NCBI GenBank assembly: GCA_965202585.1
Contig: OZ241827.1
Span: forward strand, 12,028,001-12,092,000
Origin: Thalia democratica
Lineage: Eukaryota
DNA length: 64,000 bases
Reading direction: 5' to 3'
Position numbers and translations under genes: made by a program. The notes beneath the pieces are model-generated. The model ran no database searches. It saw only the letters and a program-made list of their open reading frames with translations, and was not told where the DNA came from. Shown here piece after piece: positions 6,600 to 54,021 of this stretch. How positions within the stretch are numbered: the first letter of the stretch is position 1; each line of letters opens with the position of its first letter.

Positions 6600-8580
6600 A
6601 AATAAAACTAAAATATTAATAAAACACAGTTAAGGTATTATGTTGCTTGTGATGTACTCAAGTTTGTAAGATAGGTTTAAGTTTTTTATAAGTTATCTAG
6701 GAGTTGCTACCTAAGTGCATTTCTCCTTTCAGATTATACAAATGTCTAGCTAACAAATTCTTAGGAGGCACTCCTAACATAATCTTTTTATCTATTATTT
6801 TTCTAATAAAAATTAATTCTAAGTTTATTATAAATGTATTAATAAAAAATATAAGTTTTATATATATTTCTAGTTTATTTATTTCGTTTTTTATACAAAA
6901 TTTTTCGTTTCAAAAATAAAAAATGTTCTAAATACTAGGTTCGTACATTATTCTCATGATGTTGGAACAAAATTTATTAACTCTTAATGTTTTATTATAA
7001 ATCAACACAACTTTTAACATGCAACTTCAAATCTAACTCTAAATTTATTTTGTTTATAAAACTACCGTCTTTAAAATAAAATAACTTCAAAAGCATAACA
7101 TTTTGAATAGTTTTTCTCGTTTCGTGTAAGTTTAATAAAAAAACAACTAATATTTGTATGTATGTTATGTGACACAATATATTATACAAATGTTTAAAAC
7201 GTAATACAGAGTATAAAAATCATCGCTAGTTTACTAAAAATTCAGTCAGACCTAAAAAAGTTGAATCAGCAAAATGTAATAAATTGTATTTCTTATCTTA
7301 TTTTTTTAACTTTAATTTTTGATATGTTTCGGTTAGGTTGGATAGGGAGAAGGCTATCAATAAACTACTTATCAACAAAAGCTTTAAAAAGGCTGCTAAA
7401 TCATTATTTTTTTCAACGTTTTTTCAGACTGACTTGTGAATATAATTTCAAGAAATCATTAGATAAGCAATTCATTTTTTTTACATATAACCTTTAAATT
7501 TAAAAAAATCACAAAAAATAACTGGAAAACCTGGAATTGGTTCTTAGAAGAATAAAAATTAAATGTTCTAAAGTTAAGTGGTCTTAGGTTAAGTGTCGAT
7601 AAATGAATAAAACTAAATAATTAATAAAACACAATTAAGGTACTATGTTGCTCGTGATGTACTTAAGTTTGTAAGATGTGTTTAAGCTTATTATAAGTTA
7701 TCTAGGAGTTGCTACTTAAATGCATTTCTCCTTTAAGGTTATAAAAATGTCTAGCTAACAAATTCTGAGGAGGCACTCCTAACATAATCTTTTTATCAAT
7801 TATCTTCCTATAAAACACATTATTGCTATTTATTTTTAGTTTTTTATAAAATATTTTACTTTCTTTTCGCCTTTTTAATTAAGTTTTTTTTTTAATTTAA
7901 ATTTCAAATAAAATTAAGCAAATATTAAAACAATTAAAAGTGCGAAAATGATGCTCTAATTTTTATATAAATGTGTTGATAAAAATTTTAAGTTTTTTAT
8001 AATTTTTTTTTTCATATATTTCGTACTTTTTACAATTTTTTTCTTTGAAAATTAAAAATTGTACTAAATTCTAGGTTCGTACATTATTTTGATGATTTTG
8101 GAACAAAATCAATTAACTCTTAATGTTTTATTGTAAACCAACACAACTTTTACCTTGCAACTTCAAATTTAACTCTAATTTTATTTGTATTTGAAACTAA
8201 TGTTCTTAAAATTAAATAATTTATTAAGTAAAATATTTCGAATTTTTTTCTCGGTTTTATATAATTTTATAAATAACCACTAATATCTCTATGTATGTTA
8301 TGTGACAGTGTATATATTCAAATATGAAAAACGTAATGACAAGTATAAAAATCATCGCTATTTTACGTCAAACTCAGTTAGATCTAAAAAAGTTGAATCA
8401 GCAAAAAATAATAAATTGTATTTCTTATCTATTTTTTTAAAATTAAATTTTTTATAAGTTTAGGTTAGGTTGGTTACGAAAAAGGCTATAATTAAACTAC
8501 CAATTAACAAAAGCTTTAAAAAAATTTGCTAAATCATTTTCAAAAATTAAAAAATCATCATAAAATATAACTGGAACAAC
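6600..8580. repeat. Two diverged tandem copies of a ~1-kb unit upstream of BET-like copy A
   Basis: TCTAGGAGTTGCTAC...AGGCACTCCTAACATAATCTTTT occurs at about 6697-6790 and 7701-7795. It is mirrored in the right arm at about 22150-22250 and 23160-23250. Confidence 0.8.
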
Positions 8581-11500
8581 CTTGAATTGGATATGTTTTA
8601 TCAAAAATTTTTAATTAACATAATAAAACCTAGAAATTTTATTTAACATTCATCAAAGTTAGTGAAATTAAAAAATTGTAATTGTGGTGAAAACAATAGT
8701 AGCCTATTGATAATAATTAAGCTACTACAAACTGTAAATTCTTTAAATTGTTTTTATAGAATCAAAATGTTTAGTAGAAAAACTATTTTAAAACGGCTTT
8801 TAAGTTATGAAACTTTAGTTACGGCCTAGCACTACTTAGATTTAAATAAGATTATATTTATCAAGCTCTAAATTTAGTTAATCTATACTTTATTACAAAC
8901 TAATAAAAGCTAATTCCTCGCATGAGTTCAATTTTATTATTATTATTAATATCAATTATTAATTATTTTTATAATTAGTAAACATAAATTTACAACAAAA
9001 TAATTTTTAAGCATCATAAACCAGAGTAACAAAATTTTATAATGTATCATTTATTAATACAAACTATTAGGTCAACGTAAAAGTCAAAGATAAAAGTTTT
9101 TTAAATATAAGGAACATTTTAAACAGTTTTTAAACTGCTTATTGCCAACTGTCGTTATTCAAAAGAAAGAAAATTATATAATAGATTGATTAATTCAACT
9201 GAATTTTGTATCAAATTAACTTTATTATAACATATCATACCTATGTGTGAAATAACAGTTAATAATATACTTGCACGCTTTTCAAAGCTATTTAAAGATT
9301 TATGATAAGTATGTTATAAACTGTATAATTTTATGAAAAATATAATCAAATTAAGTTAAAAGATTAAGTTATAATACTTTGTTAATTTCCTTGTTAATCG
9401 CGTTAGTTAATTAAATTAACATATTTTAAGACTGTAAATTTAGTACCCTTTTCTAAATTAAAATGAATTTTAAATTTAACCTCAGTTTTTGTATTTTAAC
9501 TATTATATTTAATTACTAGTTGTTAAATTTCTTTGAAAAACGTAGTAAAAATTGAAATTTTTAGTTTTAGTAAAGTGAATTTTTATTTTTAGGTAGTTAA
9601 AATTTTCAGTTAAATCTTCATTGGCAACTCTATCATGATGTTTTTAACATAATAAAGATTACATATAAAATATCAAAATATACTTTCAAATCTGTTTTAA
9701 TAACTTGATTCCGTAAAATTTAAAATGTTGTTGTTATTCTTTCTTATAAGCATGTTATGTTATGAAAATACATTTTCGTAGGTTTATTTAGAATTGTAGA
9801 TAATAATCAACTAAGTTTTTGATCGTTTAATTACAACTTTATAAACAAACTTCTCGTTTTTTAGTAACAATTTTGAATAGAGTTTAGTTCTTCTTTAAAA
9901 GTAGAACCTACGAAGAATGTTTTTTTAATAATTTTACCCCGCCAGTAATTTTTAAATTATGAAATAATATCTAGTTTATACTAGTTTGAACTGATTTTAA
10001 ATAGAGAGGTTAGCTAAATAGTTAAGTTTTTCTTAATTTGATTACTTAGTTACTTAATTTAATTAATAACACTTAAGTACTTAAAGACTTAGGTACTTAA
10101 ATAATGAGTTTTCTTAGGAGAAATAACTGAAAGGCGTAATCATTTTAGAATTAATATTTTAAAGCTATAAACTAAAATTGTAATACTTTTTAAAAATAAT
10201 GCTACCCGATTAATTCTATCTAAATAATAATTTTGCATACATATGAGCAATTTTTTTAACATTATATTTTGATTTCTAAGTGTTAATAAATTTATTCTAC
10301 AATAATAGGAAACAAAATGATTAAATAACCATACTGTTTTTCAAAGTTTATATAGTTTTTTTGTAATTTTGTTTAGTTATAACAGATAGGCTAACTCATT
10401 CTAGTTTGAAGTATTTTGAAAACTCAGAATAATTCAGTCTTGTTTCTGATGTTTAAATATATAGGATAACTTAAGCAAGCTTATCACTTGATAATTTAAT
10501 CAAAAAAATAGATTTCTATTGATTTGAAAAAACTTATTTAGATACTTTTAAAGTTAATCAAATATTTTAAAAATTAATTAAAAAAAACTTAAGATGACTT
10601 AGTTTCACATCATCTTTCCAGAAGTTAGTTAGTTAAAAAGTACAAGAGTTTATTCATCACAGTTGTAAAGAAAGATGGTATTTTTCCAAATAAAGATAAT
10701 TCAATATTTTATTCAGTTGTAATATAAGAAATCAAAAAGACATTTTAACAATTCAAATTCTAATATATATATATTCAATTTGCTTTAAAAAATCATATAA
10801 TAGTTACCCATTTCATTTTAAAAAGTCTAAAACCAATTGTTTTAGTGTTTTCTCATGATTTTTTCTCAATTTTTTATTTGTTTTTTGTAAGGTGTTTCCA
10901 AAGTTTGTAGGGTATGGATTGTGGTACACTTAATTTATTGACCCTCCCCGTTTTAATTAACCCTACGTTATCAAAATACTTAGAAATACTAGATGTTATT
11001 TTAGCTACTTTACATAAATCAGAAAAGACTATTTTAGTAATTTATCTTTAATAAAATGAACCACTAAAAATTATTAAAAAAAAAAAAGTTAATTTTTTAA
11101 ATAAATTAGAATAAATAAAACTTTATAATAATTTGAGTTTAAAAATAATTTACAGGTTACATTTAGAACTATAAAATATTAGATAACTTTTAAACAATTT
11201 AGTATGGCCGAATAAAAACTTATAATACTTGAATAATAAACATACAAAAAAAATAACATGCAGTTCTAAAAATTGTCTAATAGTAACTTTGAGCAGTACC
11301 TCAATACTACCTCTAGGTCTTACCAACAACTATCCCAAAATAGTTAGAACATTGTCTTAAATACTTGTGTTCTGGTTGAATAATTTTGTGACAATCAATA
11401 TTACGACACTCAAAAACTTTAAAACAGGGGAAGATTAAATGATAAACGCGTGCCATTACAATTTAATTCGAATACATTTAATTTATAATTTTTTCCATGG

Positions 11501-11699
11501 ATTCAGACGAGACTATACAAATAATGAATATTAACTTAGAGTAAATTTGTAATATTCTAGACTAAAAATAGTCCATTAGTATTTAAAACTTTATTTTAAA
11601 CACTATTAAGTTCTTAAAAACTTCTTCAATAAAAAAAAACATACTTAAAAAAAAATAACAGTTTACTTGCGTTTTGTTATAACACTAAGTAAAATCTAA

Positions 11700-12595
11700 G
11701 GAGTCACATAATTTTGAATACAAAATATAAGATACAATAATAACACCTCGTCAAAGAAGTATAAATTTATACAATTTAATTTATCAGCGTTATAGGAGGT
11801 CTGAATTAATTAGTTTATAATTAAACGATCAATTGTTCTATAGTGCTTTGAACACATTTTACATTTTTTTTAATAAATAATAAACTGTTTTAAACTGTTT
11901 TATATGGAACTTATTAACTAACAATTTCACTGTACACTGCAACAATACAGTACAATGAACAAACAGTTTGTCTGTTTCAAATTAAAATGTCATGCTTGAT
12001 TGATTGTATAATTACTTTTCAGTAATAAATTCACAACTATGGTATGTGTAATGAAAATATTTAAGATTTTTATTCAAATTTGTCTAAAACCTGTCCACAG
12101 GTAATAATTTGCTTAAACAAAACAAAAGATTTAAATAAATTAAATCCTGATTACTTACATTTATAGTGTTTGTTTAGGTTGATTTGAAATAGTAGAACAA
12201 CTTCATATACTTGCAGTTCTAAACCAATACGCTTGAGAAAGTTTTTGGTGAAAACTATTAAAATTAAGGTTATGTTTAAGCTAATAATGTACCAGGCTTT
12301 CCCATAGTTAGCCGTTTCAGAAATTTTTGTGGCTATAGGCTGCAAAGGGGTAAAAAGGGGGTCGTGAGTAGTTATTCGAGAAATTCTCGGGGTAGTAGGC
12401 CGCAAAGGGGATCGTGGGTAGTAAAGGAGTCTCAACGGGACCATCATAATTCAAATCGTTCATTTGACATTCTGAAGTTTACAGTAAACCGCTAAAAAAA
12501 TATTTAAATGTAATATTAAAACTTGTACTAGAAAATCAGAGTTGATGGTGAAGGGCAAAAAAATGTTTTCTGAGTATTAATCGCCAGTCTTTTAA
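11700..12595. repeat. ~0.9-kb unit, copy 1 (direct copy at ~13067-13925, inverted copy at ~16670-17490, diverged homolog at ~41385-42405)
   Basis: Shared motifs CAGCGTTATA and GTACCAGGCTT...TAGGCTGCAAAGGGGTAAAAAGGGG in the main copies. Confidence 0.8.
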
Positions 12596-13066
12596 CTTTA
12601 TAATTAATGTGTATATTTTTTTATTTTTACTTGAACATGTTAATACTTGAGTTAAACCGTGCCAAAGACTTTTTAAGATAAAATTTTTTAAGTATGTATT
12701 TTTTTAATTTTTATACAATTATCTATTTAAACTTTTGACCTTCTTTATAAGCTCTTTTTTGACCGAAAAGTGACCGAAAGTAAAATGACTTTTAATAAGT
12801 TCAAAAGTAAATTTAAAATAAAAATGACCTTTTAAAGTTCAAAACTTAAGCTATTTTAAATAAATGAATTATATAATTAATATAAATTTATATTAATTAT
12901 AAAAATACAAAAAGTAGCTGTTCATTGTTTTATGTGGTTTTGAGATTACGGAGAATGGTAATGTTAATTTTTAAATAGAATTCACAAACTTATATTTTTT
13001 TATGAATCAGTTCAATAGCATTTATATGTTATTTGCATTTAATAATGAAATTAAACGAAATCAAGG

Positions 13067-13925
13067 GAGTTATCATAATTTTGAAGACAAAATATAAGAT
13101 ACAAATATTATACATTGTAAAAGAAGTATAAATTTATAGAATTTAATGTTTCAGCGTTATAAGAGGCCTGAAATAATAAGTTTAAAATTAAACGATCGAT
13201 TGTACTAGAATGCTTTGACCACAATTTGCATATTTTTTCTAAAAATCAAATAATAAACTATTTAAAACAAATTTTTATGGAACTTATCAACTAACAATTT
13301 TACTGTACACTGCTACAATACCGTACAATGAACAAACAATTTGTCTATTTCAATAAAAAATTTCATGCTAGATCGATTGTATTATAATTTTCTAGTAAAA
13401 AATCCACAACTATTGTGTGTGTAATGAAAATATTCAGGATTTTTATTTTAAAATATTCTAACCCAGTCCACAGGTATTAATTTACTTAAAAAACAAAAAA
13501 ATTTAATGAATTTAATGCTGATTACTTAAAATTTATAGTGTTTGTGTAGGTTGATTTGAACTAGTAGAACAACTTCATATACTTGCAGTTCTAAACCAAT
13601 ACACTTGAGAAAGTTTTTGGTGAAAACTATTAAAATTAAGGTTATGTTTAAGCTAATAATGTACCAGGCTTTACCATAGTAAGCTCTTTGAGCAGTTTTT
13701 GTAACTATAGGCTGCAAAGGGGTAAAAAGGGGGTCGTTGGTAGTAAAGAAGCCACAATGGGGCCAACAGACAATAATCTAAAGCTTGCACTTGACATTCT
13801 GAAATTTACAGTAAATTGATAAAAAAATCTTTAAGAGTATTATTAAAACTTGTATTAGAAAATCAGAGTTGATAGTAAAGGACAAAAAAAAACGTTTCCC
13901 GAGTACTTAAAGGCAGTTTTATAAC
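13067..13925. repeat. ~0.9-kb unit, copy 2, in the palindrome spacer
   Basis: Direct match to 11700-12595; 15615-15760 is likewise a direct copy of 12715-12865. Confidence 0.8.
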
Positions 13926-16900
13926 TTTTGAAAAATTGTACTTTCCTACTTGCGCTGGTTTAGAAATTTAGGGGACCAAAAGCTGCAAAAAGAGATGGGG
14001 CCATAAGTCCATTAATTAAAACTTACACCAGATTTTCTTTAGTTGAAATGAAGAGCATAAAATTGAGGTCTTAGGCGTATTTGATATTTGTATTTAAGAG
14101 AGGCCATAGCTTATTTTGTTTCGTTTGCTTTTGAAAAAAAATTTATACAATAGGTTTTAAGGATAAACTAAGTTCTAAAAAAAGTGTATAATAAGGTTAA
14201 AAACCACGACTAAACTAAAAATAATTACTCAAACTTTTTATATGAAGTATCCTTAAAAATTAAGCCAACCATTTTGTAATTTTAGTTTATAGTTGTCTCT
14301 ATCATTTATGTGTAACTTATAACAAGAAAACAAACAAAATAATTGTATAATAGTCATACAACTGATATGTAGAAACAACTTTAACAGAAATCGTTTAACA
14401 CACTATTATAAAATTAAAATGTTTTTTTATTAAAAAAAAGCCTTTAAAACATTGCAAACTTAAATTTCACAAAGAAAAATAAATAATAAATATTCATATA
14501 TAATTTTTTTTATTTTTTAACTCAGATTAATTTAATATGTGAAATAAACAGTATTTGAAATTTTGCAAAGTTTAATGATATTCAAGCCTAACTGCTAGTA
14601 AAAAACTTTTAAAATTTTGAATGTTGTGGTTTATTTCTAAAAAAATTATAAACTTTACTTATTTAGCTTTAATATCTAAGTAAATGGACATATATATATA
14701 TATATTAATTTATTTTTAAATTTCAAATTTATTGAGAAAAATTATGTAAAAAGACTCTAAAATAACAAGATCACTTAAGTATTAAAACAAATTTCAACTG
14801 TATCATTTTAAATTTGTTAATAGAACTTTAAACCTAAGATTGGTTAAAATTTTTAAGTATTAAAGTATATTAATTTAATTCAATTTGATTACAATAGATT
14901 TTAAAAATATAATTCTAACTGAAATAATTAAAACACTGTGGGTAACATATTTTTCTAAAACAAAAGCAGTAATAATAAATTTAATAAAATACTTTCTGTA
15001 ATCAATTTAAAATATCTGTAATTGAAGCAATTTAACCCAGTACAATTTAAATATCTAACAATTCCAACAAAGTTAATAAACATATTTTAAACAGTTTGTA
15101 ATTAATCTTAGTTAAATAGTACACTGTTGTCAATTAAATATTTAGAATAAAGCAAAAAAACACAACTTAGTGTTAACTACTACATTTTTTCAAGTAAAAA
15201 ATATTCTTACTATTAATTATTTATGTAAATTAACATTAAACTACAGCTTATCAGAATTTTATAAAGAAATTTTTAACTTTTTTATTGGATTTCTTTATTT
15301 TTTTAACATTTTCAATTTTCTGCAAAGAAATTTTTTCTAGAAAATAGTTTACTAATACTTTTTATTTTTGTATAAACTCAGACTGTCTTCTTTAAGTATT
15401 TTTTTAAGTAGCTTAAAATAAAAATAAACTTTCCATAGTTTTTAATTTTTTAAAGAACAACTTAAAAATCTTAAGGAAAAAGAGAATTTTATAAATAGGA
15501 AATGCTGTCTGTAACAGTTATGCTTACTTGATTATTTTTATACTAAAATTAACTATGCAAGTTCTTTTTTAGATAAAATGTTTAAAGATTTAATTTTCAA
15601 ATTTTTAAACAGTACTTATCTATTTAAACTTTTAACCTTCTTTATAAGCTGTTTTTTGACCAAAAAGTGACCGAAAGTAAAATGACATTTTATAAGTTCA
15701 AAAAAAATTAAGATTTAAAATGACCTTTTAAAGTTCAAAAATTAAGTTATTTTAATAAATGTTTGAAAATTTTTTAAAACTTTTCATTTTTTAAATTATG
15801 TTCAAAAATTCCAAAAATCATTTAAATAAGCTTTTACAATTTTCTAACATAAACCATTTTTTTAAAACATCTAATTTTAACCAAGGGATGAATAACACAT
15901 AACCATTAACTTTTAGTCACCTAGCACTTTGTTAAAAGTATCTCGATTCTCGACTAGTATTTGTTTTATAATCAGATATCTTTCTTATATACTATTAAAA
16001 TTTAAAGTATTTCAACAAAAATTTAATTGCAAAATTTGTCTAAATTATTTGTGAGTAAGAAGTGTAGCTAGTCTAATTACTTTTATGATAGTTTTATATT
16101 TTACCGTTATGTTTATGTATAATCCTAAATAAAAACTATTTGTCATTCGGTGAGATAACTTATCTATATAAATCAAACTTAATTTTAATTAAATTATTTT
16201 TTAAACGAAATGATTTTTTGAATTAATTTTATTCTTAATTTTATGTATCATTTTGTTTAAGTGGGCTAGGTATTGATGCCTGGGTCCATCGTATTGACAA
16301 TAAATTTGCAATTAAAGTAAACGAGGAAACAAAACATTTTATTACAAATTTTAGTCCTTACTATCATCTATAGATGCAATTTATAAGCTTTTAGTTTCTT
16401 CTGATAAAAGATGAAAGTAGGACTAATTTTTGTAAAAAATATTTTCTTTGCTCGATTACTCAAATTAGAATTAAAAAGAATTTCGATTAAATTAGAAGGT
16501 CAAAAAAGAGCTTATAAAGAAGGTCAAAAGTTTAAATAGATAATTGTATAAAAATTAAAAAAATACATACTTAAAAAAATTTATCTTAAAAAGTCTTTGG
16601 CACGGTTTAACTCAAGTATTAACATGTTCAAGTAAAAATAAAAAAAATATACACATTAATTATAAAGTTAAAAGACTGGCGATTAATACTCAGAAAACAT
16701 TTTTTGCCCTTCACCATCAACTCTGATTTTCTAGTACAAGTTTTAATATTACATTTAAATATTTTTTTAGCGGTTTACTGTAAACTTCAGAATGTCAAAT
16801 GAATACTTTGAGTTATGATGGCCCCGTTGAGACTCCTTTACTTCCCAGGATCCCCTTTGCGGCCTATAGCCACAAAAATTTCTGGAACAGCTATCTATGG

Positions 16901-21055: not shown

Positions 21056-21098
21056 GACTGAGACCGGTTTCGTCCTTATTAGGACTCATCAGTCAGTC
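21056..21098 (-). ncRNA. Minimal type I hammerhead ribozyme
   Basis: Minus strand GACUGA-CUGAUGA-GUCCU AAUA AGGAC-GAAA-C CG G-UC-UCAGUC. Stem I GACUGA/UCAGUC (extendable to 21044-21114), complete core, stem II, minimal palindromic stem III ACCGGU, and a GUC cleavage triplet (cut between 21062 and 21061). Confidence 0.9.
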
Positions 21099-21239
21099 AC
21101 AACCGAAAAACTTGTAGTCGTCAATCTACAAACAGTTTATGATGCTTTCGCATAAAGCAACCATTTGCTGGCAATGATTAGTGACGTCAGTATTGTCTTT
21201 GCCGTGCAACGTTTAAAGCATTGTCCACTAGGCAAGACA

Positions 21240-21715: not shown

Positions 21716-23555
21716 GACTTGTTCTGCTGACTTTCGCCGATTTTGTTGATTGACAAATAAAATTAGAGTTAAATTTGAAGTTGCAAGGTAAAAGTTGTGT
21801 TGGTTTACAATAAAACATTAAGAGTTAATTGATTTTGTTCCAAAATCATAAAAATAATGTACGAACCTAGAATTTAGAACAATTTTTATTTTTCAAAGAA
21901 AAAATTGTAAAAAGTACGAAATATATGAAAAAAAAATTATAAAAAACTTAAAATTTTTATCAACACATTTATATAAAAATTAGAGCATCATTTTCGCACT
22001 TTTAATTTTTTTAATATTTGCTTAATTTTATTTGAAATTTAAATTATAAAAAAAAACTTAATTAAAAAGGCGAAAAGAAAGTAAAATATTTTATAAAAAA
22101 CTAAAAATAAATAGCATTAATGTGTTTTAAAGGAAGATAATTGATAAAAAGATTATGTTAGGAGTGCCTCCTCAGAATTTGTTAGCTAGACATTTTTATA
22201 ACCTTAAAGGAGAAATGCATTTAAGTAGCAACTCCTAGATAACTTATAATAAGCTTAAACACATCTTACAAACTTAAGTACATCACGAGCAACATAGTAC
22301 CTTAATTGTGTTTTATTAATTATTTAGTTTTATTCATTTATCGACACTTAACCTAAGACCAACTAACTTTAGAACATTTAATTTTTATTCTTCTAAGAAC
22401 CAATTCCAGGTTTTCGAGTTATTTTTTTGTGATTTTTTTAAATTTAAAGGTTATATATAAAAAAATGAATTGCTTATCTAATGATTTCTTAAAATTATAT
22501 TCACAAGTCAGTCTTAGCTGAAAAAACGTTGAAAATAATAATGATTTAGCAGCCTTTTTAAAGCTTTTGTTGATAAGTAGTTTATTGATAGCCTTCTCCC
22601 TATCCAACCTAACCGAAACATATCAAAAATTAAAGTTAAAAAAATAAGATAAGAAACAAATTTATTACGTTTTGCTGATTCAACTTTTTTGGTCCGACTG
22701 AATTTGAAGTAAACTAGCGATGATTTTTTTACTCTTTATTACGTTTTTCACACTTGTATAGTATGTTGTGTCTTATAACATACATAGAGATATTAGTTGT
22801 TTTTTATTAAACTTGTACAAAACGAGAAAAAATATTCAAAATGTTATGCTTAAGAAGTTATTTCATTTTAAAGACGGTAGTTTTAAAAACAAAATAAATT
22901 CAGAGTTAGATTTTAAGTTGCAATGTTAAAAGTTGTGTTGGTTTACAATAAAACATTTAGAGTCAATAAATTTTGTTCCAAAGTCATTAAAATAATGTAC
23001 AAACCTAGTATTTAGAATATTTTTTATTTTTCAAACGAAAAAAATTGTATAAACTACGAAATAGATAAACAAAAAAGATATATAAAACTTAGAATTTTTG
23101 TTAATACATATATAACAAACTTAGAACTAATTTATAATAGGAAAATATTTGGTAAAATTATTATGTTAGGAGTGCCTCCTAAGAATTTTATTACTAAATA
23201 TTTGTGTAATCTGAAAGGAGAAATGCTTTAGATAACAACTCATAGATTACTTATAATAAGCTTAAACATATCTCACAAATTTAACCTTATCATATAATAC
23301 CTTAACTATGTTTTATTAATATTTTAGTTATAACATTTTAAGAACACTTAATGGTTTACACAACAATAATACTTGGTAACGACTAACAATAGCACAATAG
23401 TAAGCTTACACACTTCTTACAAATATGTATTCATTGTGGATAAAAAATACTAGGAGTATGTCTTATTTTATTTCTTTTTTGCTAACTAAACTCCTTAGTT
23501 TACATATAACTGACACCAAATTATAAATATCAGAAGCATAATAATAAACTTAAAT

Positions 23556-29500: not shown

Positions 29501-29691
29501 ACTATTAGTTAATTTTTTATATTTATACTTTTCATAGTGCAACACCACCAAGAATACAAGCAGAAAAGCAACGGTTGAAAGAAGAAGCTCATCGTAGAAG
29601 ACTTGCGCAACCAACATTCGATTTGCTGGAGCAAGCTAGATTAATGACTGATTTTGAAACGGAAAATTCATGTTTTTTTTTTAGTCTTTAA
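23556..29691 (+). CDS. BET/BRD4-derived protein, copy B: atypical BD1-like bromodomain, basic low-complexity middle, BRD4-CTD-like C-terminus (542 aa if one A-run is A9; as given it stops at 227 aa)
   Basis: GT-AG exons 23556-23666, 24331-24468, 24683-24793, 25092-25168, 25466-25631, 25819-26015, 26156-26270, 27231-27407, 28019-28172, 28694-28763, 28934-29093, 29538-29691. Phases are consistent except for one extra A in A10 at 25879-25888. SRPFHDPADPIAQDRQDYFKVIKKPMCIGDIKKKLDSNMYKTADECLADFELMFKNSYEYISPGYKIVDMALELQE aligns with BET BD1. The end QRLKEEAHRRRLAQPTFDLLEQARLMTDFE resembles the BRD4 CTD. Confidence 0.82.
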
Positions 29692-36879: not shown

Positions 36880-37093
36880 CAAAATTTCGGATTCGGCAAA
36901 ATCCTAATCCGAATTTTACTTCGAATTTATGATTCGGCCGAATACGAATCCGAGTTCTTTTTTAATTTAGGATTTGACCGAATCCGAATTCAAATCTCAT
37001 TTTGAAATTTAGATTAGGCCGGATACAAACCCAAGTCCAAAAAGGCAAGATTCGTCCAAATCCGGGTCCAATTCTTGATTCGGTAGATCATTA
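36880..37093 (-). mobile_element. 5' terminus and subterminal repeats of the hAT element
   Basis: Clustered GATTCGG/CCGAATCC motifs ending in GATTCGGTAGATCATTA. The matching opposite terminus was not found. Confidence 0.55.
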
Positions 37094-38725: not shown

Positions 38726-39790
38726 TTAAGGTTGCTTGCGGATTTCTTTTTTCATCAACACTATCGGGGAAGTTATCAATTGTCCAAACTCAACATTGTA
38801 CCCGCATTTTTTGTAAAATTCCACCACATCGTGTGAGGAGCTCACCACGCAACAATTAAATCCTCTTTTAAATGCCGAATCCTCAGCAGCTAACAACATT
38901 CTCTTACCAAGCTTTTTTCCTCTGTAATCTTCTGATACTGTCACTATAAAAAAATAATTTTTTTATTATAAAGTACATGGTTTATGAACAGTTAATCCCT
39001 ATAGATTTATAAAATGAACTTTTACTTCAGTAGATAAGCTTTAGCATTTAAAATATTTTGAACCAAGTTAATTATATACCTTAACTAGTTATTGTTTTAA
39101 ACTTTCTTTAAATATAACACATCAAGTTGACTTACCCAAATCAAACTTAACAGTAGTGTTTATTTCAATAAATTTTTCCCAATATATTTTTTCAACATCA
39201 TTAAAGTCTTTTATTTTTTCGACAAGAACATGTCCCATTATTTTATGAGGATTAACGGAAGTATCCATGTATGCAAATGAAGTTGGTAGGTCATCACAAG
39301 AATTTGCTAATGACTCCATACTGTTTTTTATTTGTTTGTAAACTTATTTAATCATAAATCTACAAATTTTCTTATTTTAAGTCATCAAGTTGGTAGTTTC
39401 TCACAAGACTGTGCGAGTATATCTATCTGGAGTTATAAGAGTATTGTTTAATATACACACAAAGAGAGCAACTTTAAACTACCAACTAACTTAACAGTAT
39501 ATTAAAACATCCGTTTTAAACTTCAAGTAGGAGTTTCTCATACTAAAACAACTAATTTTATTAAGTTTAGATGTTAAAAGTATTACACAGAAGGTTAAGC
39601 TTTATACATAATTATCTATAAACTAATCTATAAACTAAGTAATACAAACGGAGAATTTCATACAAACTCACTTAATATCAAAGTAGAAAGGAAATTCCTT
39701 TTCTATCAGTTGATAGCAATCTTCTCGGAATTGAGGTCGTAGTTTATGAACAGGTATGAGCTCAAATTTTCTCGAATTTTTCACTTGCAT
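38726..39790 (-). CDS. NAA80: NAA80-like GNAT N-acetyltransferase, 3 exons, 173 aa
   Basis: Exons 39790-39672, 39320-39136 and 38943-38726 splice in frame: MQVKNSRKFELIPVHKLRPQFREDCYQLIEKEF...ESLANSCDDLPTSF...IMGHV...VTVSEDYRGKKLGKRM...DVVEFYKKCGY. It has the acetyl-CoA motif RGKKLG and NAA80-like N-terminal motifs. Orthology is not established. Confidence 0.75.
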
Positions 39791-40389
39791 TATTTTTGTT
39801 TTTTCACCTAATTCGCTCATTATTTGTTAGTTATTACAATTTTCTATTAAATGTATAAGTAAATCATTATTAAATTATTCTAACATAAGGGACTTTTTTA
39901 ATATTTAGAAAAAAAACAGAACACAAAGTTTAAATAACTCATACATATTTAGAGCTATTTTTATCAGTAGAATAAAAGCTAACAATTACTTAAATTATTA
40001 AATTGTAACAACTGCAAAATAACAATTGAAACTTATTAAATTTACATACATATAACTAACTCCAGTAAAACAGTAAAACTACAAATCAATAAAATAGAAA
40101 TAAACGCCTAAAGAATTATCACGTATTAGCAAAAGAAAAAACAGTGTAGTCTAAATAAAATTGCTTAAATTGAATTGGGAACAAAAAAAAAATAAATACG
40201 TATTACTATTTCAGCTGCTAAATAAAAATGACAGATTTTTTTGCTGTCTTGGTTTATTTACATTAAACTTCTTGAGCATATCATTTAATATTATTATAAT
40301 AGAATACTCTTGGAAATATAATATATATACCATAAAATCATACATTTATTACTTTTTTTAATAAGCAGTTATATAGTTACTACATTTGT

Positions 40390-40510
40390 TCATCTAAGAG
40401 TTACTCTCTTAGTGAATTTCTTCTTTGTGCTTAAGTAAATGTAAAGTGAAATATTACTTAGGTAGCACTCCTAACATAAATATTTTGTCTAATTATTTTC
40501 CATTAAAAAA
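40390..40510. promoter_or_regulatory. Diverged copy of the shared upstream module, ~0.65 kb 5' of the NAA80-like gene
   Basis: CTTAGGTAGCACTCCTAACATAAA and its flanks match 6697-6810; same orientation relative to the gene. Regulatory function is inferred. Confidence 0.55.
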
Positions 40511-41932
40511 CATTATACCAATAAAACTTTTATAATTTTCTTTGAAGTATTTTAACTTCTGTAACGTTTTTAATACAAAAGTTTCTTGCCTAAATTTAAT
40601 AGTATGTTAAGTTGTATAAACTTTTAATATTTAAAAAGTAATAAAAATATATATAAACCTTACTTTAAATGTGTTAGTAAAAAACCTAAGTTTTGTATGA
40701 TTTTGTTGTCTTTATCATTTTTTTTATCTTACAAAAATTTCAAGTTTGTCAAATTTTAATTCAGATTATAAGTTATAAGCCCTAAGTTAAATTTTAGTTA
40801 TAAACTATTATAAGAGCTAATCCCTAACTAGAGTAAAATGTTTTAACATAATTAAAAGGTTTTTGTTTTTAAAAGAGTATTAAGATTTTAACAGAAATGT
40901 AGAAAAAGTATTTTTAAATTATTAGTTTACATAAAACTCCTACAAAAAAATTGTAACTATCAGAAATAACAATAACTTGAATGGTTTTACCAAAGTTAAT
41001 TTCCTTATCATTCAGATTTATTATTTTTCCAGGGATGCAGTTCAGTCCAGCCTAAGTACATTGTACGTAATAACTTAAAGTACATAAGTAATATTCTAAA
41101 CCAAAAAATAGTACTTTATTATTACAAATATTAATTTAAAACACTAATAATAAGTATAAAACATCCATATATAAAAAAAACACTAAAATTAACACTTGAA
41201 AACTGATTGTAGATAAATACTTAATTTTTTGTAGAAAAAAAAGCCAAGTGAAAAGTTTATTTGAAACCAAAATTTTAAAAGCCATGAAAGATTTTTTTTT
41301 ACAGGACAACATTTTTAAAGAAATGGAGGGCATTAAAAAAAAAAATTATCTAAAATGTTTTTTTAGGTAAATGTTAAAAACATATTTTTATGTGGTTTTA
41401 ATATTAGAGAGAAAGTTAATATAAATTTATAAACTAAAAATTTCTTTCAAAACTTTTTACTATCATGCATCATTTCAGCAGCATGAATAAGATACGCATT
41501 TTTGCAATATTAAATGAAATCAAGGCAAATAAAATAAATATATTTACAAATTAAAAATTATAAAAAGTATGTCTTGTAATTAAAAAAAAAAATCATAGAA
41601 TTTGTTTTTCCAGCGTTATAGAAGGTTTAAACTAGTTATTTCAAAAAACGTACATCGATTGTACTAAAATGCTTCGACCAAAACTTAAAAAAAACTACAC
41701 TTCGAAAAAGAAATAGTAAACTTTTTAGAAAAATTTATTGATTTATAAACTAATAATATTATTATGCACTGTGCAGTTTTTCTATTGATGACAAAGCAAC
41801 AACTATTACTGTGATATTACCAAACACTTTTTCCTGTTTTAACTTAAAATGACATGCTCGATTGATTGTAAAAGAGTTTTCTATTAAAGTGTTTACAGAT
41901 TATGATGTGTACAGATTATGTATAAGATTTTG

Positions 41933-42357
41933 GGGTGCACGACTATTCAAATTCGGACAACTCAAATTCCGACAATTCAAATACTTATAAAAAAAAATTA
42001 AAGGGTTATAACTAAAAAAGTAATGCATATTTGTCAAATATAAAAAATACATATGTAGGTCCTATTAATATCTACAAGCCATTTTTTTTTGCTTTTGCAA
42101 AACATTAAATATTTTTTTAGATATGACTTAAATAATAAAAAAAATATAGTTATCTTAAGTAATTTTGAAATATCTTAAAAAGTATTTAAGATTTCGCAAA
42201 AAGGAAAAAGTTGCTTGTAGGTTTTAATAAGATCTACATACGTTTTTTATATTTAAAAAAAATTATAACAATTTTTGAGATATAGTCTTTTAAATGTTTT
42301 TTCAAGAGTTTGAATTGTCGGAATTTGAGTTGTCCTAATTTGGATTGTCATGTAACC
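41933..42357. mobile_element. Mutator-like foldback MITE
   Basis: ~50-bp TIRs (GGGTGCACGACTATTCAAATTCGGACAACTC...), perfect 9-bp TSD AAGATTTTG (41924-41932 and 42358-42366), and an internal inverted repeat. Confidence 0.85.
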
Positions 42358-42743
42358 AAGATTTTGAACTAATTAAAAAAAATTCTATACCCAATCTACA
42401 TGAAATAGTCTAGTCAACTATTTGAAAAAGTTTATTAGCTTAAAGATGATTGCTTAATTTATCATTTATCATGTAGGGTGATATTTTTATCACCCTAAAT
42501 AGCCTAACTCAGGCAAGAATGAAATTTTTACAAAACTCAGGATAACTCAGGCAAGTTTTTTTTTTTAATTTCCTGTTACTTTTAATACTTCTCGAAAATC
42601 TGAATCTAATTTATTATAAATTTTAACTGATATTTAGTTGTATTTGTTTAATATTTTATCAATAGCTAGATTTCTATTAATTGAGAGGTTTTCTGAAAAC
42701 TTTTTTTAAAATAAATCTATTATTTAAAATATTGTACTATTTA

Positions 42744-43706
42744 TGTATTTAATGGTACTTATCAGTTTTTTTAGTAAATATTTTTTTAATTATTTGATGT
42801 AAAACTTGTTTTGGTAAAAGGAATATTGGTTTTTGATTTAATCTGTGGAATTAAGTAACTCGGTAAAATAGAGTGGGAGGCCCGCAGAATTGTAAATGAC
42901 CAACCGAGTAGCTTTTTAAAAATTTTAGTTAAATCAAGCCCGCGAAAGATAAAGCTGCACCACCGCTAAATCAATTTTATAGCTTTTACTTTATATTCTA
43001 AAATTTTTGATTGAGATTCAAAATAAGATTTTAGTTAGATTTTACGGATCATTTTAAAATTGCATTATTAGTTCAAAATTTGAAAAACTAATTAAAATTC
43101 ATGTTTCTACGAGACAAAATAAACAATTGAGTAATTTTTTTTTGTTTCATTGTTTTACTTTTTGTCTTATTATAAACAACATTTAAAGAAAAGTTACTCT
43201 TCCAGATTAATTGCTAAGTTATAAAAAAACTAAATATAACAATGTCGGAAAAATACAACGATTTGTCCCAAAACAGTAGTGATGACGTTCTACCATTTCT
43301 ACATAATAATGAGCATATGCTTTCATTGGAAGACCAAGACAAAATTCTTTCAAAAATGTGTGATGACGACTTTATTAGACGCGAAATAGAAAGCATTGGT
43401 TCTTTCGCGCTAACTGCAACAAACAGTTTAATGCAAGATGAGCAAAACAGAATAAATATAAACGAGCAAGAAAGTTGTCAGCCCGCTGTGTTTTCTTCGA
43501 CAAATCAAGCTCCTAGCTACACAGTGCAAAATCAATATGAAAATAATCCAAGTTGTGCAAGAGGTCAGCCTTTGTATCAAAATGTTCAGAATTGCACATT
43601 TCAAGCGCACCAAGGTGGCATGCTTAATTACTCAAACTATCATACATTAACTTCTTCTTCTGACTATAGTCTACAACAAAATTGTCAATCAAATACGAAC
43701 AGCTGT
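42744..43706. repeat. 963-bp inverted duplication arm (other arm 52465-53427)
   Basis: Near-identical reverse complement covering the promoter and 5' part of exon 1 of the double-homeobox gene. Confidence 0.95.
43242..43706 (+). pseudogene. Truncated duplicate of exon 1 of the double-homeobox gene
   Basis: MSEKYNDLSQ...QSNTNSC, then it breaks into the tandem array; no homeobox exons follow. Confidence 0.88.
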
Positions 43707-50019: not shown

Positions 50020-50200
50020 ATATAAGTTATCGAAATTCGAGTTGCCAAAATTATTAATTTTATCGTCGGAACTTAAGGTTCCTTGTTTAAATTTTTGAAT
50101 TTAAGTTTTTCAAAACTAATTTGTCAGAGTTTAAATTGTCCGAATTTGAGTTGATGTCGGAATATAAATTGTCGGATTTTGAGTTGTCCTAAAGTGAGTT
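50020..50200. mobile_element. Fragments of Mutator-like TIR repeats related to 41933-42357
   Basis: Repeated TTGTCCGAATTTGAGTTG and TTGTCGGATTTTGAGTTGTCCTAA motifs. Confidence 0.5.
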
Positions 50201-50696
50201 TCGAGTTTTAGTTTTCATAATTTAGTTAGTAACGCATCATTTATAGATCATTCCGATTGAGTTGCTCACGTAGGTATAAATAATTGAATAGGTTTTGATT
50301 CGAACAAGAGTATAAATGTGTATTGTTAATCTAAACAAAAATACAAATCAGGTAGATATGAAGTTTATTTCTTTCGAGCATAAGTTCTAAACATAAAAGT
50401 AGTTAAAACAGCAGAAAACAGGTTATGTAGGTATATTTATAATTGAAAAAATATTTATATGGTGTCCATCTTAATATCATTTACAAAACGATAAAATAGT
50501 ATGTAATTAAAAAAAATATGCGTATAGAAAATAACTAAACATATTTTAAAGGTTTGTTCACCATACAATTATTTGTTTTAACACAAATAAAAATCATACT
50601 AGAAGCTAATCAACTTTTAATAAAGTGTTCGAATAATCTTTAACTAAGTAAAGTAGTGACAAAATGAAAAATTAGTTTCAGTAAATACTGTATATA

Positions 50697-52929
50697 TCAT
50701 GCAAGTTCATTTCTTTTAATTTCTTTTCTTTTCTTTTCCTCTTGTCGTTTGTTATTGAACCAACACTGTAAAAAGAAATGTTAGTTAGTCATTTATGTAA
50801 AAACATCAAACTAATTCTTTGAAAGAAGAAGAAAAAATACAACTTCATTATTATATTAAAAGACTAAAGAGGGTTATTATTATTCTTTAAATTAATTGAA
50901 GTATGAATACATAAAATACACTTAAATCTTCCAAGTGTCCTAAAAGCAACTTCTCTCTATCTAAAAACAACATAACAAATAAAAAAAATTTAATCAAATT
51001 CTTTTATATAAAAACAAACTATTTACTCTGCATTTATTTTCAGGCAGGCCAATTTTTTCGACAAGTTGAAAAAACTCTTTTTTGTTTGGTCTTCTATTTT
51101 CCCTGTTAGTTTTTTCGTACAGTTCTTCGAAACATTTCAACTGATGTGAAGTATAGCTGGTGCGGGGTCTAAGTTTTGAAACGTTTTTCATTATAAGTAA
51201 TAGCACTTTTGTTTCAATATATGTTTAAACATACAAACTTAATCTTCATTGTGTGTTGAAAACTAGCTTTGATTGTCAAAAAAACATTTTTTACGTGTTT
51301 TTATAACTTTGAAATTTTTTAATGAAACTCTTACCTTTTCTTATTTTTTTTCGTTTTCTGGTCTATGACACAGGACTCCCTTTCTAAAATACATTATTAG
51401 GTAATTTTTTTTATATGTTATTTATCAAACTTACTTAAATACAAAATTAATATTTTTTTTTAAATCTAGGTAGAAAATATGTTTCAGAAACACTATTGTT
51501 TTTTTGGTCATATTTTTTCAACTTATTTGTTTCAAATACTAGGATAACAAACAAACAAACTATTATTTTCAATGAGTTTAATTTCTTTTGAATAAGTTGC
51601 AAGAAGGTGTTTAAATATTTCCTCATGATTACCTCCCTTAATCTTCTCAACTGCAATACCTTGACTTTTATCTTTATGTATTCTATTTTGAAACCAGGAC
51701 TAAAAAACTTTAAAAATATTAGAGCTTTATAAATTAATTTATTAATTTTTAGTAAAAAAAAGTAAACTTTTATTATTTCTTTTATTACATGAACTTGATA
51801 AAAAAACAAACTTACTGTTAGTTCTCTTTTACTAAGACCAGTTAATTTTCCAAGTTTGTCCCTTTGATCTGGCAGTGGGTGTTTAATTCTTTCATAAAAA
51901 TATTCTAACATTGATGATTGAGAGAATGTTAAGTGTATCCTTTGTCTGTATGTAAAATCATACTTAAACTTTCCGAATTTTCACACATTACATTATTTAA
52001 GTTAATTTTGAAAATTCAAATAAAATAAATTTGTAAACTAGTTAAATTTTCTACTAGTTTAAAGTTTTGAATTTACTAACTTTCGTTTTTTTAGTTTAGA
52101 TTCCTGCTGTTTACATTGTTCGTTGGAATTATCAAATTCAAGTTTTAAATTATTATTTAAAATCAATGCATCGGATGAAGGTTCTGAAACTTTTTGCTGC
52201 AAACACCACTTTCCAAGTTTGGCATCTATGGATGATAAATAATAATTGACTGCTAAGAAAAAAAAAATTTTCAGTTAAAAAATTTAATTAAAGTTTACCT
52301 TTCATAGAGGGGTATGCACGTGGCAGTTGAGCAAAACTATCTGCTTGAGCAGGATTAACCGTTGTTACATTGAAATTATTTGCACAAGAAGGTTTCAGCT
52401 GGATACCATCTTGCAAACAAGTACTCAACTGCTGGTAGTTGTCAAAACATCTGTTTGACTGGTAACAGCTGTTCGTATTTGATTGACAATTTTGTTGTAG
52501 ACTATAGTCAGAAGAAGAAGTTAATGTATGATAGTTTGAGTAATTAGGTATGCCACCTTGTTGCGCTTGAAATGTACAATTCTGAACGTTTTGATACAAA
52601 GGCTGAGCACTTGCAAAACTTGGATAACTTTCATATTGATTTTGCACTGTGTAGCTAGGAGCTTGATTTGTCGAAGAAAACACAGCGGGCTGACAACTTT
52701 CTTGCTCGTTTATATTTATTCTGTTTTGCTCATCTTGCATTAAACTGTTTGTTGCAGCTAGCGCGAAAGAACCAATGCTTTCTATTTCGCGTCTAATAAA
52801 GTCGTCATCACACATTTTTGAAAGAATTTTGTCTTGGTCTTCCAATGAAAGCATATGTTCATCATTATGTAGAAATGGTAGAACGTCATCACTACTGTTT
52901 TGGGACAAATCGTTGTATTTTTCCGACAT
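50697..52929 (-). CDS. Double-homeodomain transcription factor, 7 exons, 443 aa (410 aa with the alternative exon-4 donor)
   Basis: Exons 52929-52299, 52252-52081, 51945-51816, 51699-51561 (or -51660), 51383-51335, 51168-51027 and 50765-50697 are all in frame. HD1 RKQRIHLTFSQSSMLEYFYERIKHPLPDQRDKLGKLTGLSKRELT|SWFQNRI; HD2 KKRPRTSYTSHQLKCFEELYEKTNRENRRPNKKEFFQLVEKIGLPENKCR|CWFNNKRQ. Confidence 0.88.
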
Positions 52930-53194
52930 TGTTATATTTAGTTTTTTTATAACTTAGCAATTAATCTGGAAGAGTAACATTACTTTAAATGTTGTTTATA
53001 ATAAGACAAAAAGTAAAACAATGAAACAAAAAAAAATTACTCAATTGTTTATTTTGTCTCGTAGAAATATGAATTTTAATTAGTTTTTCAAATTTTGAAC
53101 TAATAATGCAATTTTAAAATGATCCGTAAAATCTAACTAAAATCTTATTTTGAATCTCAATCAAAAATTTTAGAATATAAAGTAAAAGCTATAA

Positions 53195-53305
53195 AATTGA
53201 TTTAGCGGTGGTGCAGCTTTATCTTTCGCGGGCTTGATTTAACTAAAATTTTTAAAAAGCTACTCGGTTGGTCATTTACAATTCTGCGGGCCTCCCACTC
53301 TATTT
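53195..53305. mobile_element. Probable hAT MITE end fragment in the double-homeobox promoter (mirrored at ~42870-42970)
   Basis: TAGCGGTGGTGCAGC terminus-like sequence with GCGGGC motifs; no TSD identified. Confidence 0.35.
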
Positions 53306-53629
53306 TACCTAGTTACTTAATTCCACAGATTAAATCAAAAACCAATATTCCTTTTACCAAAACAAGTTTTACATCAAATAATTAAAAAAATATTTACTAA
53401 AAAAACTGATAAGTACCATTAAATACAGAGTCAATAGTTATTACAGCTTATTGATAAATACAAAAATTGATAACAATATTTAATTATAGTAATCATTATT
53501 TATAAAAACGTTTTTCCAGCTTAGACTGTTTTTAGATATAATTTCAAGAAATAATTAGATTAGCAAATCACTATTCTTAGATAAAAGCAACAAACTAAAA
53601 AAATTCGCAAAAAAAAAACTGAAAAACCT

Positions 53630-54021
53630 AGATTTGGTTCTTAGAAGAAAAAAAAATTAAGTGTTTTTAAGTTGAGTGTTCTGAAAAGAACAAAAATAAA
53701 ATACTAATTATTTTTGTTTACTGTTATATAAATTTGATATATTCAAATTTGTAAGATATGTTTATGTTTATTATAAGTTATCTAGGAGTTGCTACCTAAG
53801 TGCATTTCTCCTTTCAGATTATACAAATGTTAAGCTAACAAATTCTTAGGAGGCACTCCTAACATAATCTTTTTATCAATTATCTTCCTATAAAAAATAT
53901 TATTTCCTTTTTTATAAATTTTTTTAGAATATTTTTGTTTCATTTGAATTTTTTTAATCGAAATGTCTTGTCTAAATTTAAATAAAAAACTAAAATTAAG
54001 CAAATGTTAAAAATTAAAAGT
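53630..54021. promoter_or_regulatory. Shared upstream module, ~0.7-1.1 kb 5' of the double-homeobox gene
   Basis: High similarity to 7540-7931 and 6690-6800 (upstream of BET-like copy A), same orientation. Regulatory function is inferred. Confidence 0.65.

What the first reader, a model, noticed from the sequence alone, without database searches (positions are those of the whole stretch)
6600..54021. Three unrelated genes share homologous upstream modules: a possibly co-regulated, shuffled gene cluster
Seen: the module TCTAGGAGTTGCTAC...TTAGGAGGCACTCCTAACATAA lies 5' of, and in the same orientation as, both BET-like copies (6697 and 7701; 22150 and 23160), the NAA80-like gene (40390-40510) and the double-homeobox gene (53630-54021). 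A second module (about 12925-13480) recurs at 41385-42405 upstream of the NAA80-like gene. Inference: a modified acetyl reader, an acetyltransferase and a double-homeobox factor were placed under one promoter cassette inside an amplicon. This resembles a young germline, sex-linked or selfish gene system.
Basis: partly seen in the sequence, partly recalled or inferred. Interest (0 to 1): 0.8.

Follow-up and report, generated by a model that had tools for sequence, protein, structure and literature searches.

The report
Low-copy upstream repeat with conserved core
A 0.4-1.1 kb non-coding block really does sit upstream of a bromodomain, an acetyltransferase and a double-homeobox gene in a duplication-riddled stretch of a very AT-rich marine animal genome. 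It looks like a low-copy duplicated segment with an oddly well-kept 100-nt core, and nothing shows it to be a shared promoter.

Summary
The core motif occurs six times in the window, against about 0 expected by chance. Four copies come from one locus, through a 1005-bp tandem duplication and a 30-kb palindrome, so there are three independent loci.

In all three loci the gene lies on the same side of the module and is transcribed away from it. The homology starts 215-570 nt upstream of the ATG. The gene-proximal DNA is not shared.

The acetyltransferase locus matches the BET upstream region in four colinear non-coding blocks over 1.7 kb. That pattern indicates segmental duplication, not insertion of a small mobile element.

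The new result is a 100-nt core that is 92-98% identical among copies A1, A2 and D, while their flanks are 48-81% identical. It is an imperfect 85-nt inverted repeat with no Rfam match and no covariation.

Core integrity does not follow gene integrity. The pristine A1 core adjoins a frameshifted BET copy, and the decayed B1 core adjoins the intact one.

Expression could not be tested. The promoter-cassette and germline/sex-linked/selfish readings remain unsupported.

The parts
6586..7405 (+). Module copy A1 (core 6696-6782). It begins 215 nt upstream of the BET-A ATG (6371) and lacks about 130 nt that copies A2, N and D have.
7399..8538 (+). Left part (7399-7590) plus module copy A2 (core 7701-7787). 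It is the second unit of a 1005-bp tandem duplication.
21755..22546 (-). Module copy B2 (core 22153-22239), the palindrome partner of A2. It is 99-100% identical to A2.
22525..23351 (-). Module copy B1 (core 23161-23246), the palindrome partner of A1. Its core is decayed, with 12 private changes and a 1-nt deletion.
40350..40734 (+). Module copy N (core 40392-40479), 572 nt upstream of the GNAT ATG (39820). It is the oldest copy, with 67-71% identity in the core.
53491..54079 (+). Left part plus module copy D (core 53781-53867). The core lies 852 nt upstream of the homeobox ATG (52929). Homology to A2 ends at about 54035-54079, where other repeat and retroelement DNA begins.
11595..13939 (+). 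Second module, present as two tandem units (11663-12610 and 13029-13939) in arm A. A third copy lies at 16653-17635(-).
40755..42018 (+). Three further non-coding blocks (40755-40976, 40993-41188 and 41313-42018). They are colinear with arm A at about 8830-9060, 11460-11649 and 12854-13531.
69..6371 (-). BET-like copy A. It has a frameshift inside the bromodomain exon, and stops in exons that are open in copy B.
23556..29691 (+). BET-like copy B. Its bromodomain exon 24283-24489 is intact (Pfam E=1.5e-14).
38729..39820 (-). GNAT acetyltransferase gene, with at least 3 exons.
50697..52929 (-). Double-homeobox gene, with two homeodomain-matching exons.
42560..43706 (+). Inverted copy (92-98% identical) of homeobox exon 1 plus 674 nt of its upstream DNA. 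Its partner is 52465-53603. It includes only about 110 nt of the module's left part.
54521..59412 (+). Ty3/gypsy-type gag (54521-55873) and pol (55996-59412; protease, RT, RNase H, integrase). No LTR pair lies in the window.
60500..64000 (+). Start of a second 32.2-kb tandem unit, 98.7% identical to 28308-31806. It begins inside the BET-B gene body.

Best explanation
The module is a low-copy non-coding duplicon. It is a piece of intergenic DNA, with a 0.4-1.1 kb first block followed by further blocks, that was copied around this region by segmental duplication (dispersed, tandem and inverted) and not by high-copy transposition.

One old duplication placed it next to the GNAT gene. Another placed it next to the homeobox gene. 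A 1005-bp tandem duplication and the 30-kb palindrome then produced the four BET-side copies.

Within it, a core of about 100 nt, which is an imperfect 85-nt inverted repeat, evolves in concert among copies A1, A2/B2 and D. This could be short-tract gene conversion, purifying selection, or both. Copies B1 and N decay freely.

Shown: the copies, their non-independence, the colinear blocks, the low copy number, the core-versus-flank contrast, and the mismatch between core and gene integrity.

Inferred: that duplication rather than transposition spread the module, and that conversion and/or selection keeps the core. Any regulatory role is possible but is not needed to explain the data.
For: Copies and significance.

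Palindrome, tandem unit and 32.2-kb unit.

The N locus is colinear with arm A in four blocks over 1.7 kb (z = 9-39), with no coding signal. A small mobile element would not give this pattern.

Copy number:
- In the bin holding the core, summed contig depth is 3.5-6.2 times that of the homeobox gene in four runs.
- At letters private to copy D (53765, 53767), D-type depth is 12-15% of the total. It equals the depth of single near-identical contigs in the neighbouring gene and gag.
- This gives roughly 6-8 other copies per D copy, so the family is of the order of ten.

Core versus flanks:
- A1-D: 99/101 in the core, 67% and 48% in the flanks.
- A2-D: 92% in the core, 65% and 64% in the flanks.
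- A1-A2: 94% in the core, 81% and 75% in the flanks.

A1 has 0 private changes and B1 has 12.

Conversion is active here. A patch at 7069-10068 is 95-99% identical between the arms, against 84-92% elsewhere.
Against: - Being upstream of a start codon, in one polarity, at 3 of 3 independent loci is unlikely for neutral junk in a gene-poor genome. This fits a regulatory role or an insertion preference better.
- Three lineages keeping the same roughly 100-nt tract is more easily explained by selection than by repeated conversion with the same boundaries.
- The depth figures come from assembler word depths summed over contigs. The tool itself warns that these are not copy numbers.
- The rest of the genome could not be searched.
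Confidence: 0.5

Rival explanations
1. Shared upstream regulatory cassette. On the gene strand, the core would supply a TATA-like element, a start site and a short non-coding leader ending at a GT (TTAG|GTAGCA), or an enhancer. It would drive the bromodomain, GNAT and homeobox genes together.
For: - Same polarity and a position -0.2 to -0.9 kb from the ATG at all three independent loci.
- The core is far better kept than its flanks.
- On the gene strand the invariant 15-mer follows an A/T-rich TATA-like stretch. A GT is kept in A1, A2, D and N and lost in the decayed B1.
- Acceptor-like sites lie just upstream of each ATG.
Against: - The gene-proximal 215-570 nt are not homologous.
- The pristine A1 core adjoins the frameshifted BET-A, and the decayed B1 adjoins the intact BET-B.
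- The candidate donor is weak.
- The N copy has lost three of the four AGGAG motifs.
- The short ORF in the core is interrupted in D (reading).
- No RNA run holds the locus.
Confidence: 0.2
2. The core is a small non-coding RNA gene family with a few active copies (A1, A2/B2, D) and pseudogenes (B1, N). Its position next to protein genes is a by-product of co-duplication.
For: - The pattern of a gene-sized (100-150 nt) block at 92-98% identity with diverged flanks and decayed extra copies is typical of small-RNA gene families.
- A run of at least four T follows the 3' hairpin on the + strand in every copy.
- The A1 and N cores fold better than shuffles, with z from -2.2 to -2.9.
- Core integrity is independent of the neighbouring gene.
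Against: - No Rfam family reaches even E<=2.
- There is no compensatory change, and the covariation term is unfavourable on both strands.
- The A2 copy folds no better than shuffles.
- No A/B boxes, C/D boxes or usable H/ACA pockets were seen by eye.
- T runs are common in 24% GC DNA.
Confidence: 0.12
3. Transposon-derived element. One version is a MITE-like 85-95-nt inverted-repeat element embedded in the block. The other is the LTR of the adjoining gypsy-type element with solo LTRs elsewhere. In either case it would sit near gene starts because of an integration preference.
For: - The core has 24-nt terminal inverted arms matching 20/24, and folds as a panhandle.
- T-rich direct repeats flank it in A1.
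- Copy D lies directly 5' of gag-pol in the same orientation.
- Some LTR elements are known to target promoters (general knowledge).
- Salp genomes are about 80% repeats, many of them unclassified (PMC10686999).
Against: - Only about ten copies at 80% likeness or better.
- No LTR pair, no TG..CA ends and no clear primer-binding site.
- Conservation runs past the inverted arms into both flanks.
- The flanks of all copies are homologous, so there was one insertion at most.
- A uniformly ageing insertion cannot give 98% in the core against 65% in the flanks.
- The N-A homology continues for 1.7 kb.
Confidence: 0.13

Closest known systems
Low-copy repeats / core duplicons of segmentally duplicated regions (e.g. 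primate LCR16a-type duplicons; duplicated genes that acquire foreign upstream DNA)
   Same: A low-copy block of about 1 kb is found at several nearby sites, flanked by different genes. It spread by tandem, inverted and dispersed duplication and shows patchy identity from gene conversion.
   Different: The block here is non-coding and very small. Its 100-nt core is kept far better than the rest. No transcript or promoter capture has been shown.
Ampliconic palindromes with germline genes (mammalian X/Y amplicons; Stellate/Su(Ste) in Drosophila)
   Same: Large gene-bearing palindrome, tandem amplification, arm-to-arm conversion patch, and chromatin and transcription-factor genes.
   Different: - The arms are only 84-92% identical, not above 99%.
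- One BET copy is degraded.
- By other notes of this scan, such palindromes are common across this genome.
- The probable host is hermaphroditic.
- No expression or sex-linkage data are available.
Multicopy small-RNA gene families (snRNA, snoRNA, Y/vault-type clusters)
   Same: A gene-sized conserved block with diverged flanks, a few near-identical copies plus decayed ones, and a T run after a terminal hairpin.
   Different: No Rfam match, no covariation, no recognisable promoter or box elements, and no RNA evidence.
MITEs and solo LTRs near gene starts
   Same: Terminal inverted arms, AT-rich flanks, a position upstream of genes, and an adjoining gypsy-type element.
   Different: Copy number is of the order of ten. 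The flanks are homologous at all copies. There is no LTR pair and no independent target-site duplication.

Membership tests
High-copy interspersed repeat (SINE/MITE) | Hundreds or more dispersed copies | tested here: not met
   Core-bin depth is 3.5-6.2 times the neighbouring gene. D-private letters make up 12-15% of the depth, so the family is of the order of ten copies at 80% likeness or better. Older copies would not be seen.
High-copy interspersed repeat (SINE/MITE) | Terminal inverted repeats (MITE) or internal Pol III A/B boxes (SINE) | tested here: inconclusive
   24-nt inverted arms match 20/24. No A/B boxes were seen by eye, and no tRNA was found.
High-copy interspersed repeat (SINE/MITE) | Independent insertions with unrelated flanks and target-site duplications | tested here: not met
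   The flanks of all six copies are homologous. A TSD-like T-rich repeat is seen only in A1.
LTR of the adjoining Ty3/gypsy element | Matching LTR at the other end; TG..CA termini; primer-binding site next to the 5' LTR | tested here: not met
   No direct repeat lies between 53400-54500 and 59400-60700. The ends lack TG..CA. The 3' end of the element is cut off by the duplication junction at 60500, so this test is incomplete.
Known structured RNA family (Rfam) | Covariance-model match at or near the gathering score | tested here: not met
   The best hits are 10-16 bits against gathering scores of 40-55.
Structured RNA gene (any) | Compensatory changes that keep the pairs | tested here: inconclusive
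   There were one or no double changes, and the covariation term is unfavourable. Only three independent lineages are available.
Shared promoter / cis-regulatory cassette | Same position and polarity relative to each gene | tested here: met
   The gene lies on the TCTAGGAG side and is transcribed away. The core is 325, 572 and 852 nt from the ATG.
Shared promoter / cis-regulatory cassette | Homology covers the proximal promoter / start site of each gene | tested here: not met
   The gene-proximal 215-570 nt are not homologous (z from -0.2 to 3.2).
Shared promoter / cis-regulatory cassette | Element integrity follows integrity of the driven gene | tested here: not met
   A1 is pristine beside the frameshifted BET-A. 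B1 is decayed beside the intact BET-B, although B2 is intact 1.3 kb upstream.
Shared promoter / cis-regulatory cassette | Transcripts start at or splice from the element; genes co-expressed; open chromatin | not testable with these tools
   No RNA run holds the locus.
Germline / sex-linked ampliconic gene system | Large palindromes and tandem amplification of the genes | tested here: met
Germline / sex-linked ampliconic gene system | Near-identical arms (>99%) kept by conversion, with intact gene copies | tested here: not met
   The arms are 84-92% identical, apart from one 3-kb patch at 95-99%. BET-A is degraded.
Germline / sex-linked ampliconic gene system | Sex-biased read depth; germline-restricted expression | not testable with these tools
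   No sexed samples or RNA were available. Salps are sequential hermaphrodites (PMC10686999), if the host is a salp.

The most novel reading that the evidence does not exclude
The 100-150-nt core is a functional element kept by selection in several copies. It would be either a shared start site or leader that wires a bromodomain reader, an acetyltransferase and a double-homeobox factor into one expression programme, or a new small-RNA gene family that has been co-amplified with them in a pelagic tunicate.
Probability: 0.25. Interest if true: 0.6.

Novelty: new member of a known kind. Interest (0 to 1): 0.3.

Why it matters
If the core were a working shared regulatory element, this would be a clear case of unrelated chromatin and transcription genes being wired together by duplication of upstream DNA. 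It would come from a poorly studied chordate relative whose genome is full of large palindromes.

As it stands, the finding mainly documents how nested segmental duplication scatters intergenic blocks next to different genes. It also singles out one 100-nt element whose conservation needs explaining. A genome-wide search and a modest RNA data set would settle the question.

Tried and rejected
- **Known RNA families:** Rfam at gathering score over the whole window, and at permissive E-values on the D core, the A1 core and the second module. Nothing credible was found.
- **tRNA or tRNA-derived SINE:** no tRNA was found.
- **RNA structure:** RNAalifold on both strands showed no covariation.
- **Other RNA classes, by eye:** a U7-like Sm motif on the gene strand, C/D and H/ACA snoRNA layouts, and spliced-leader RNA were considered. 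None meets the defining boxes, and no model hit supports them.
- **Coding exon:** the short ORF across the core is stopped in D and N. A six-frame comparison of the N and A blocks gives only weak hits in mixed frames.
- **Metagenome scan:** the conserved 20-mer gave one unrelated 43% GC contig in JGI metagenome contigs.
- **Viral contig scan:** no match.
- **Extra loci through proteins:** the exact look-up of homeobox exon 1 found nothing on record. The homologue search with the last GNAT exon found no candidate.
- **RNA runs:** none hold the locus.
- **Shared downstream module:** none is shared behind the three genes.
- **LTR pair for the gypsy-type element:** none in the window.
- **Literature search for the core strings:** no paper.
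- **The scan's own index, by sequence:** blank.


Full report
**What is there**

The window is very AT-rich, about 24% GC. The 15-mer occurs 4 times and the 22-mer 6 times within 3 mismatches, against 0.06 and 0.00 expected from shuffles. A profile built from the copies finds exactly six cores and nothing else above noise:

| Copy | Core position | Strand |
|---|---|---|
| A1 | 6696-6782 | + |
| A2 | 7701-7787 | + |
| B2 | 22153-22239 | - |
| B1 | 23161-23246 | - |
| N | 40392-40479 | + |
| D | 53781-53867 | + |

**Architecture of the window**

A self-comparison shows nested duplications:
- Positions 69-12764 and 30025-16498 are the arms of a palindrome of about 30 kb. The arms are 84-92% identical, apart from one patch (7069-10068) at 95-99%.
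- Inside each arm, a 1005-bp unit carrying the module is tandemly duplicated.
- Positions 28308-31806 recur at 60500-64000 at 98.7% identity, which is the start of a second 32.2-kb tandem unit.
- Positions 42560-43706 and 52465-53603 form an inverted repeat around a 420-bp satellite.

A1/A2 and B1/B2 are therefore one locus copied four times. The module occurs at three independent loci.

**The genes**

All three genes lie on the minus strand, to the left of their module.
- Bromodomain gene: copy A has its ATG at 6371, and copy B is on the other arm. The Pfam Bromodomain match is E=1.5e-14 for copy B.
- GNAT acetyltransferase: 38729-39820, E=2.5e-9.
- Gene with two homeodomain exons: 50697-52929.

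At each locus the gene is on the TCTAGGAG side of the core and is transcribed away from it. The NAA80 assignment was not tested. A homologue search with the last exon found no candidate.

**How far the homology goes**

- D matches A2 over 53491-54079 / 7399-7990 (74%, z=66).
- N matches A2 over about 40350-40734 / 7660-8035 (63-65%, z=17).
- On the gene side the homology stops 215 nt (BET), about 530-570 nt (GNAT) and 562 nt (homeobox) before the ATG. The proximal stretches are not related (z -0.2, 0.1 and at most 3.2).
- On the far side, the N locus continues to match arm A in three more colinear blocks: 40755-40976, 40993-41188 and 41313-42018, against about 8830-9060, 11460-11649 and 12854-13531 (z 14-39).
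It ends near 42018, not 42405.
- A six-frame comparison shows no coding signal in these blocks.
- Colinear blocks over 1.7 kb mean the GNAT-side and BET-side upstream regions are old paralogous segments, not two insertions of a small element.
- At D, the homology is cut at about 54035-54079 by other repeat DNA, followed by a Ty3/gypsy-type gag and pol (54521-59412). No LTR pair lies in the window.

**Is it a high-copy repeat?**

The genome itself could not be searched, so I laid Logan contigs of four runs on 50601-56600 at 80% likeness. The runs were three organism runs and one marine metagenome.
- In the bin holding the core, summed depth is 3.5-6.2 times that of the homeobox gene. Five copies in the window are similar enough to be laid there.
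- At two letters private to copy D (53765, 53767), D-type depth is 12-15% of the total. It equals the depth of single near-identical contigs in the gene and in gag. That gives about 6-8 other copies per D copy, against four in the window.
- Two loose-end consensus sequences match no window copy exactly.

A few more copies therefore exist elsewhere, some probably in the next tandem unit. The family is of the order of ten, not hundreds. The adjoining 54001-54200 bin is about 30 times the baseline. That bin is a different, partly low-complexity sequence.

**The unexpected part**

Identity is very uneven along the module.

| Pair | Core (101 columns) | Left flank | Right flank |
|---|---|---|---|
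| A1-D | 99/101 | 67% | 48% |
| A2-D | 92% | 65% | 64% |
| A1-A2 | 94% | 81% | 75% |
| A1-B1 | 86% | 79% | 82% |
| N vs A2/D | 67-71% | 41-47% | 56-63% |

- Polarising the changes, A1 has no private change in about 90 nt since the palindrome formed. B1 has 12 plus a deletion.
- The core is an imperfect 85-nt inverted repeat with 24-nt arms matching 20/24. It contains four AGGAG/CTCCT motifs. In A1 it folds as a panhandle (z -2.2 and -2.9), but in A2 it does not.
- The core has no Rfam relative and shows no compensatory changes.

**Does the core serve the neighbouring gene?**

Comparing the two BET copies exon by exon shows that arm A has a frameshift inside the bromodomain exon. This agrees with its weaker, shorter Pfam match. 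Arm A also has stops in exons that are open in arm B. The pristine proximal core (A1) thus sits beside the degraded gene, and the decayed core (B1) sits beside the intact one. The intact copy does keep B2 1.3 kb upstream. This pattern is not expected if the core were an essential promoter element of the adjacent gene. It fits short-tract gene conversion from a D-type donor, or a function independent of the neighbour. Conversion is clearly active here, as the 95-99% patch in the palindrome shows.

**Reading**

The best-supported account is a low-copy duplicon spread by segmental duplication, whose core evolves in concert (confidence about 0.5). A shared regulatory cassette remains possible (about 0.2).
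- In favour: the position and polarity at 3 of 3 loci are hard to credit as chance in a gene-poor genome. On the gene strand the invariant 15-mer follows a TATA-like stretch, and a GT is kept in every copy except the decayed B1.
- Against: the proximal promoters are not shared, core integrity does not follow gene integrity, and nothing could be tested at the RNA level, because no RNA run holds the locus.

A small-RNA gene family (about 0.12) and a transposon-derived element (about 0.13) are the other rivals.

**Context**

Earlier notes of this scan call the genome a salp or pelagic tunicate, and marine metagenomes do hold this locus. Those notes list many 28-62 kb gene-bearing palindromes elsewhere in the genome (unchecked here). 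Published salp genomes are about 80% repeats, and salps are sequential hermaphrodites (PMC10686999). The palindromic, amplified look of this locus is therefore not special to it, and 'sex-linked' is unlikely. The germline and selfish parts of the reading have no evidence either way.

**Verdict**

The interpretation as one promoter cassette in a germline or selfish amplicon is not supported by what could be tested. The one item worth following up is the 100-nt core, whose conservation among some copies is unexplained.

Noticed in passing
window 7069-10068 vs 19900-22900: A patch of about 3 kb in the palindrome is 95-99% identical between the arms, while the rest is 84-92%. This looks like a recent arm-to-arm gene conversion, and it includes module copies A2/B2.
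   Followed up: partly
window 5427-5634 (arm A) vs 24283-24489 (arm B): BET-like copy A has a frameshift inside the bromodomain exon, and stops in at least two further exons that are open in copy B. Copy A is probably a pseudogene.
   Followed up: partly
window 54001-54200: A short stretch between the module and gag has about 30 times the contig depth of its neighbours in all four runs. Many loose ends fall at 54058, 54087 and 54127. It is either a high-copy element or a low-complexity attractor, and it contains a 22-nt tandem duplication.
   Followed up: no
window 53200-53330 and its inverted copy 42789-42965: A GC-rich island of about 130 nt lies in otherwise AT-rich DNA, 270-400 nt upstream of the homeobox ATG, inside the inverted repeat. 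It has no Rfam hit at gathering score.
   Followed up: no
window 60262-60549: An ORF with a signal-peptide-like start lies downstream of the gypsy-type pol and may be the start of an env-like gene. It is cut at 60500 by the junction of the 32.2-kb tandem duplication.
   Followed up: no
window 41915-42373; also 49791-50173 and 31946-32072: A self-palindromic element of about 400 nt (75% between its halves) has weaker relatives downstream of the homeobox gene (z=9.5) and downstream of BET-B (z=6). It may be a foldback-type repeat.
   Followed up: partly
window 34979-35999 (-): ORF fragments look by eye like a hAT-type transposase remnant (D-x-TRWN-like motif). Pfam gave no hit at E<=0.1, so this is unconfirmed.
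   Followed up: partly
window 21005-21753: Arm B carries a 750-bp insertion that is absent from arm A. It includes a 24-nt minisatellite (21137-21818) that creates long spurious ORFs.
   Followed up: no
window 50601-56600, runs X1-X3: Single near-identical contigs over the homeobox gene and gag have word depths of about 700-1300. No single-copy reference was available to say whether this whole locus is amplified in those samples.
   Followed up: no
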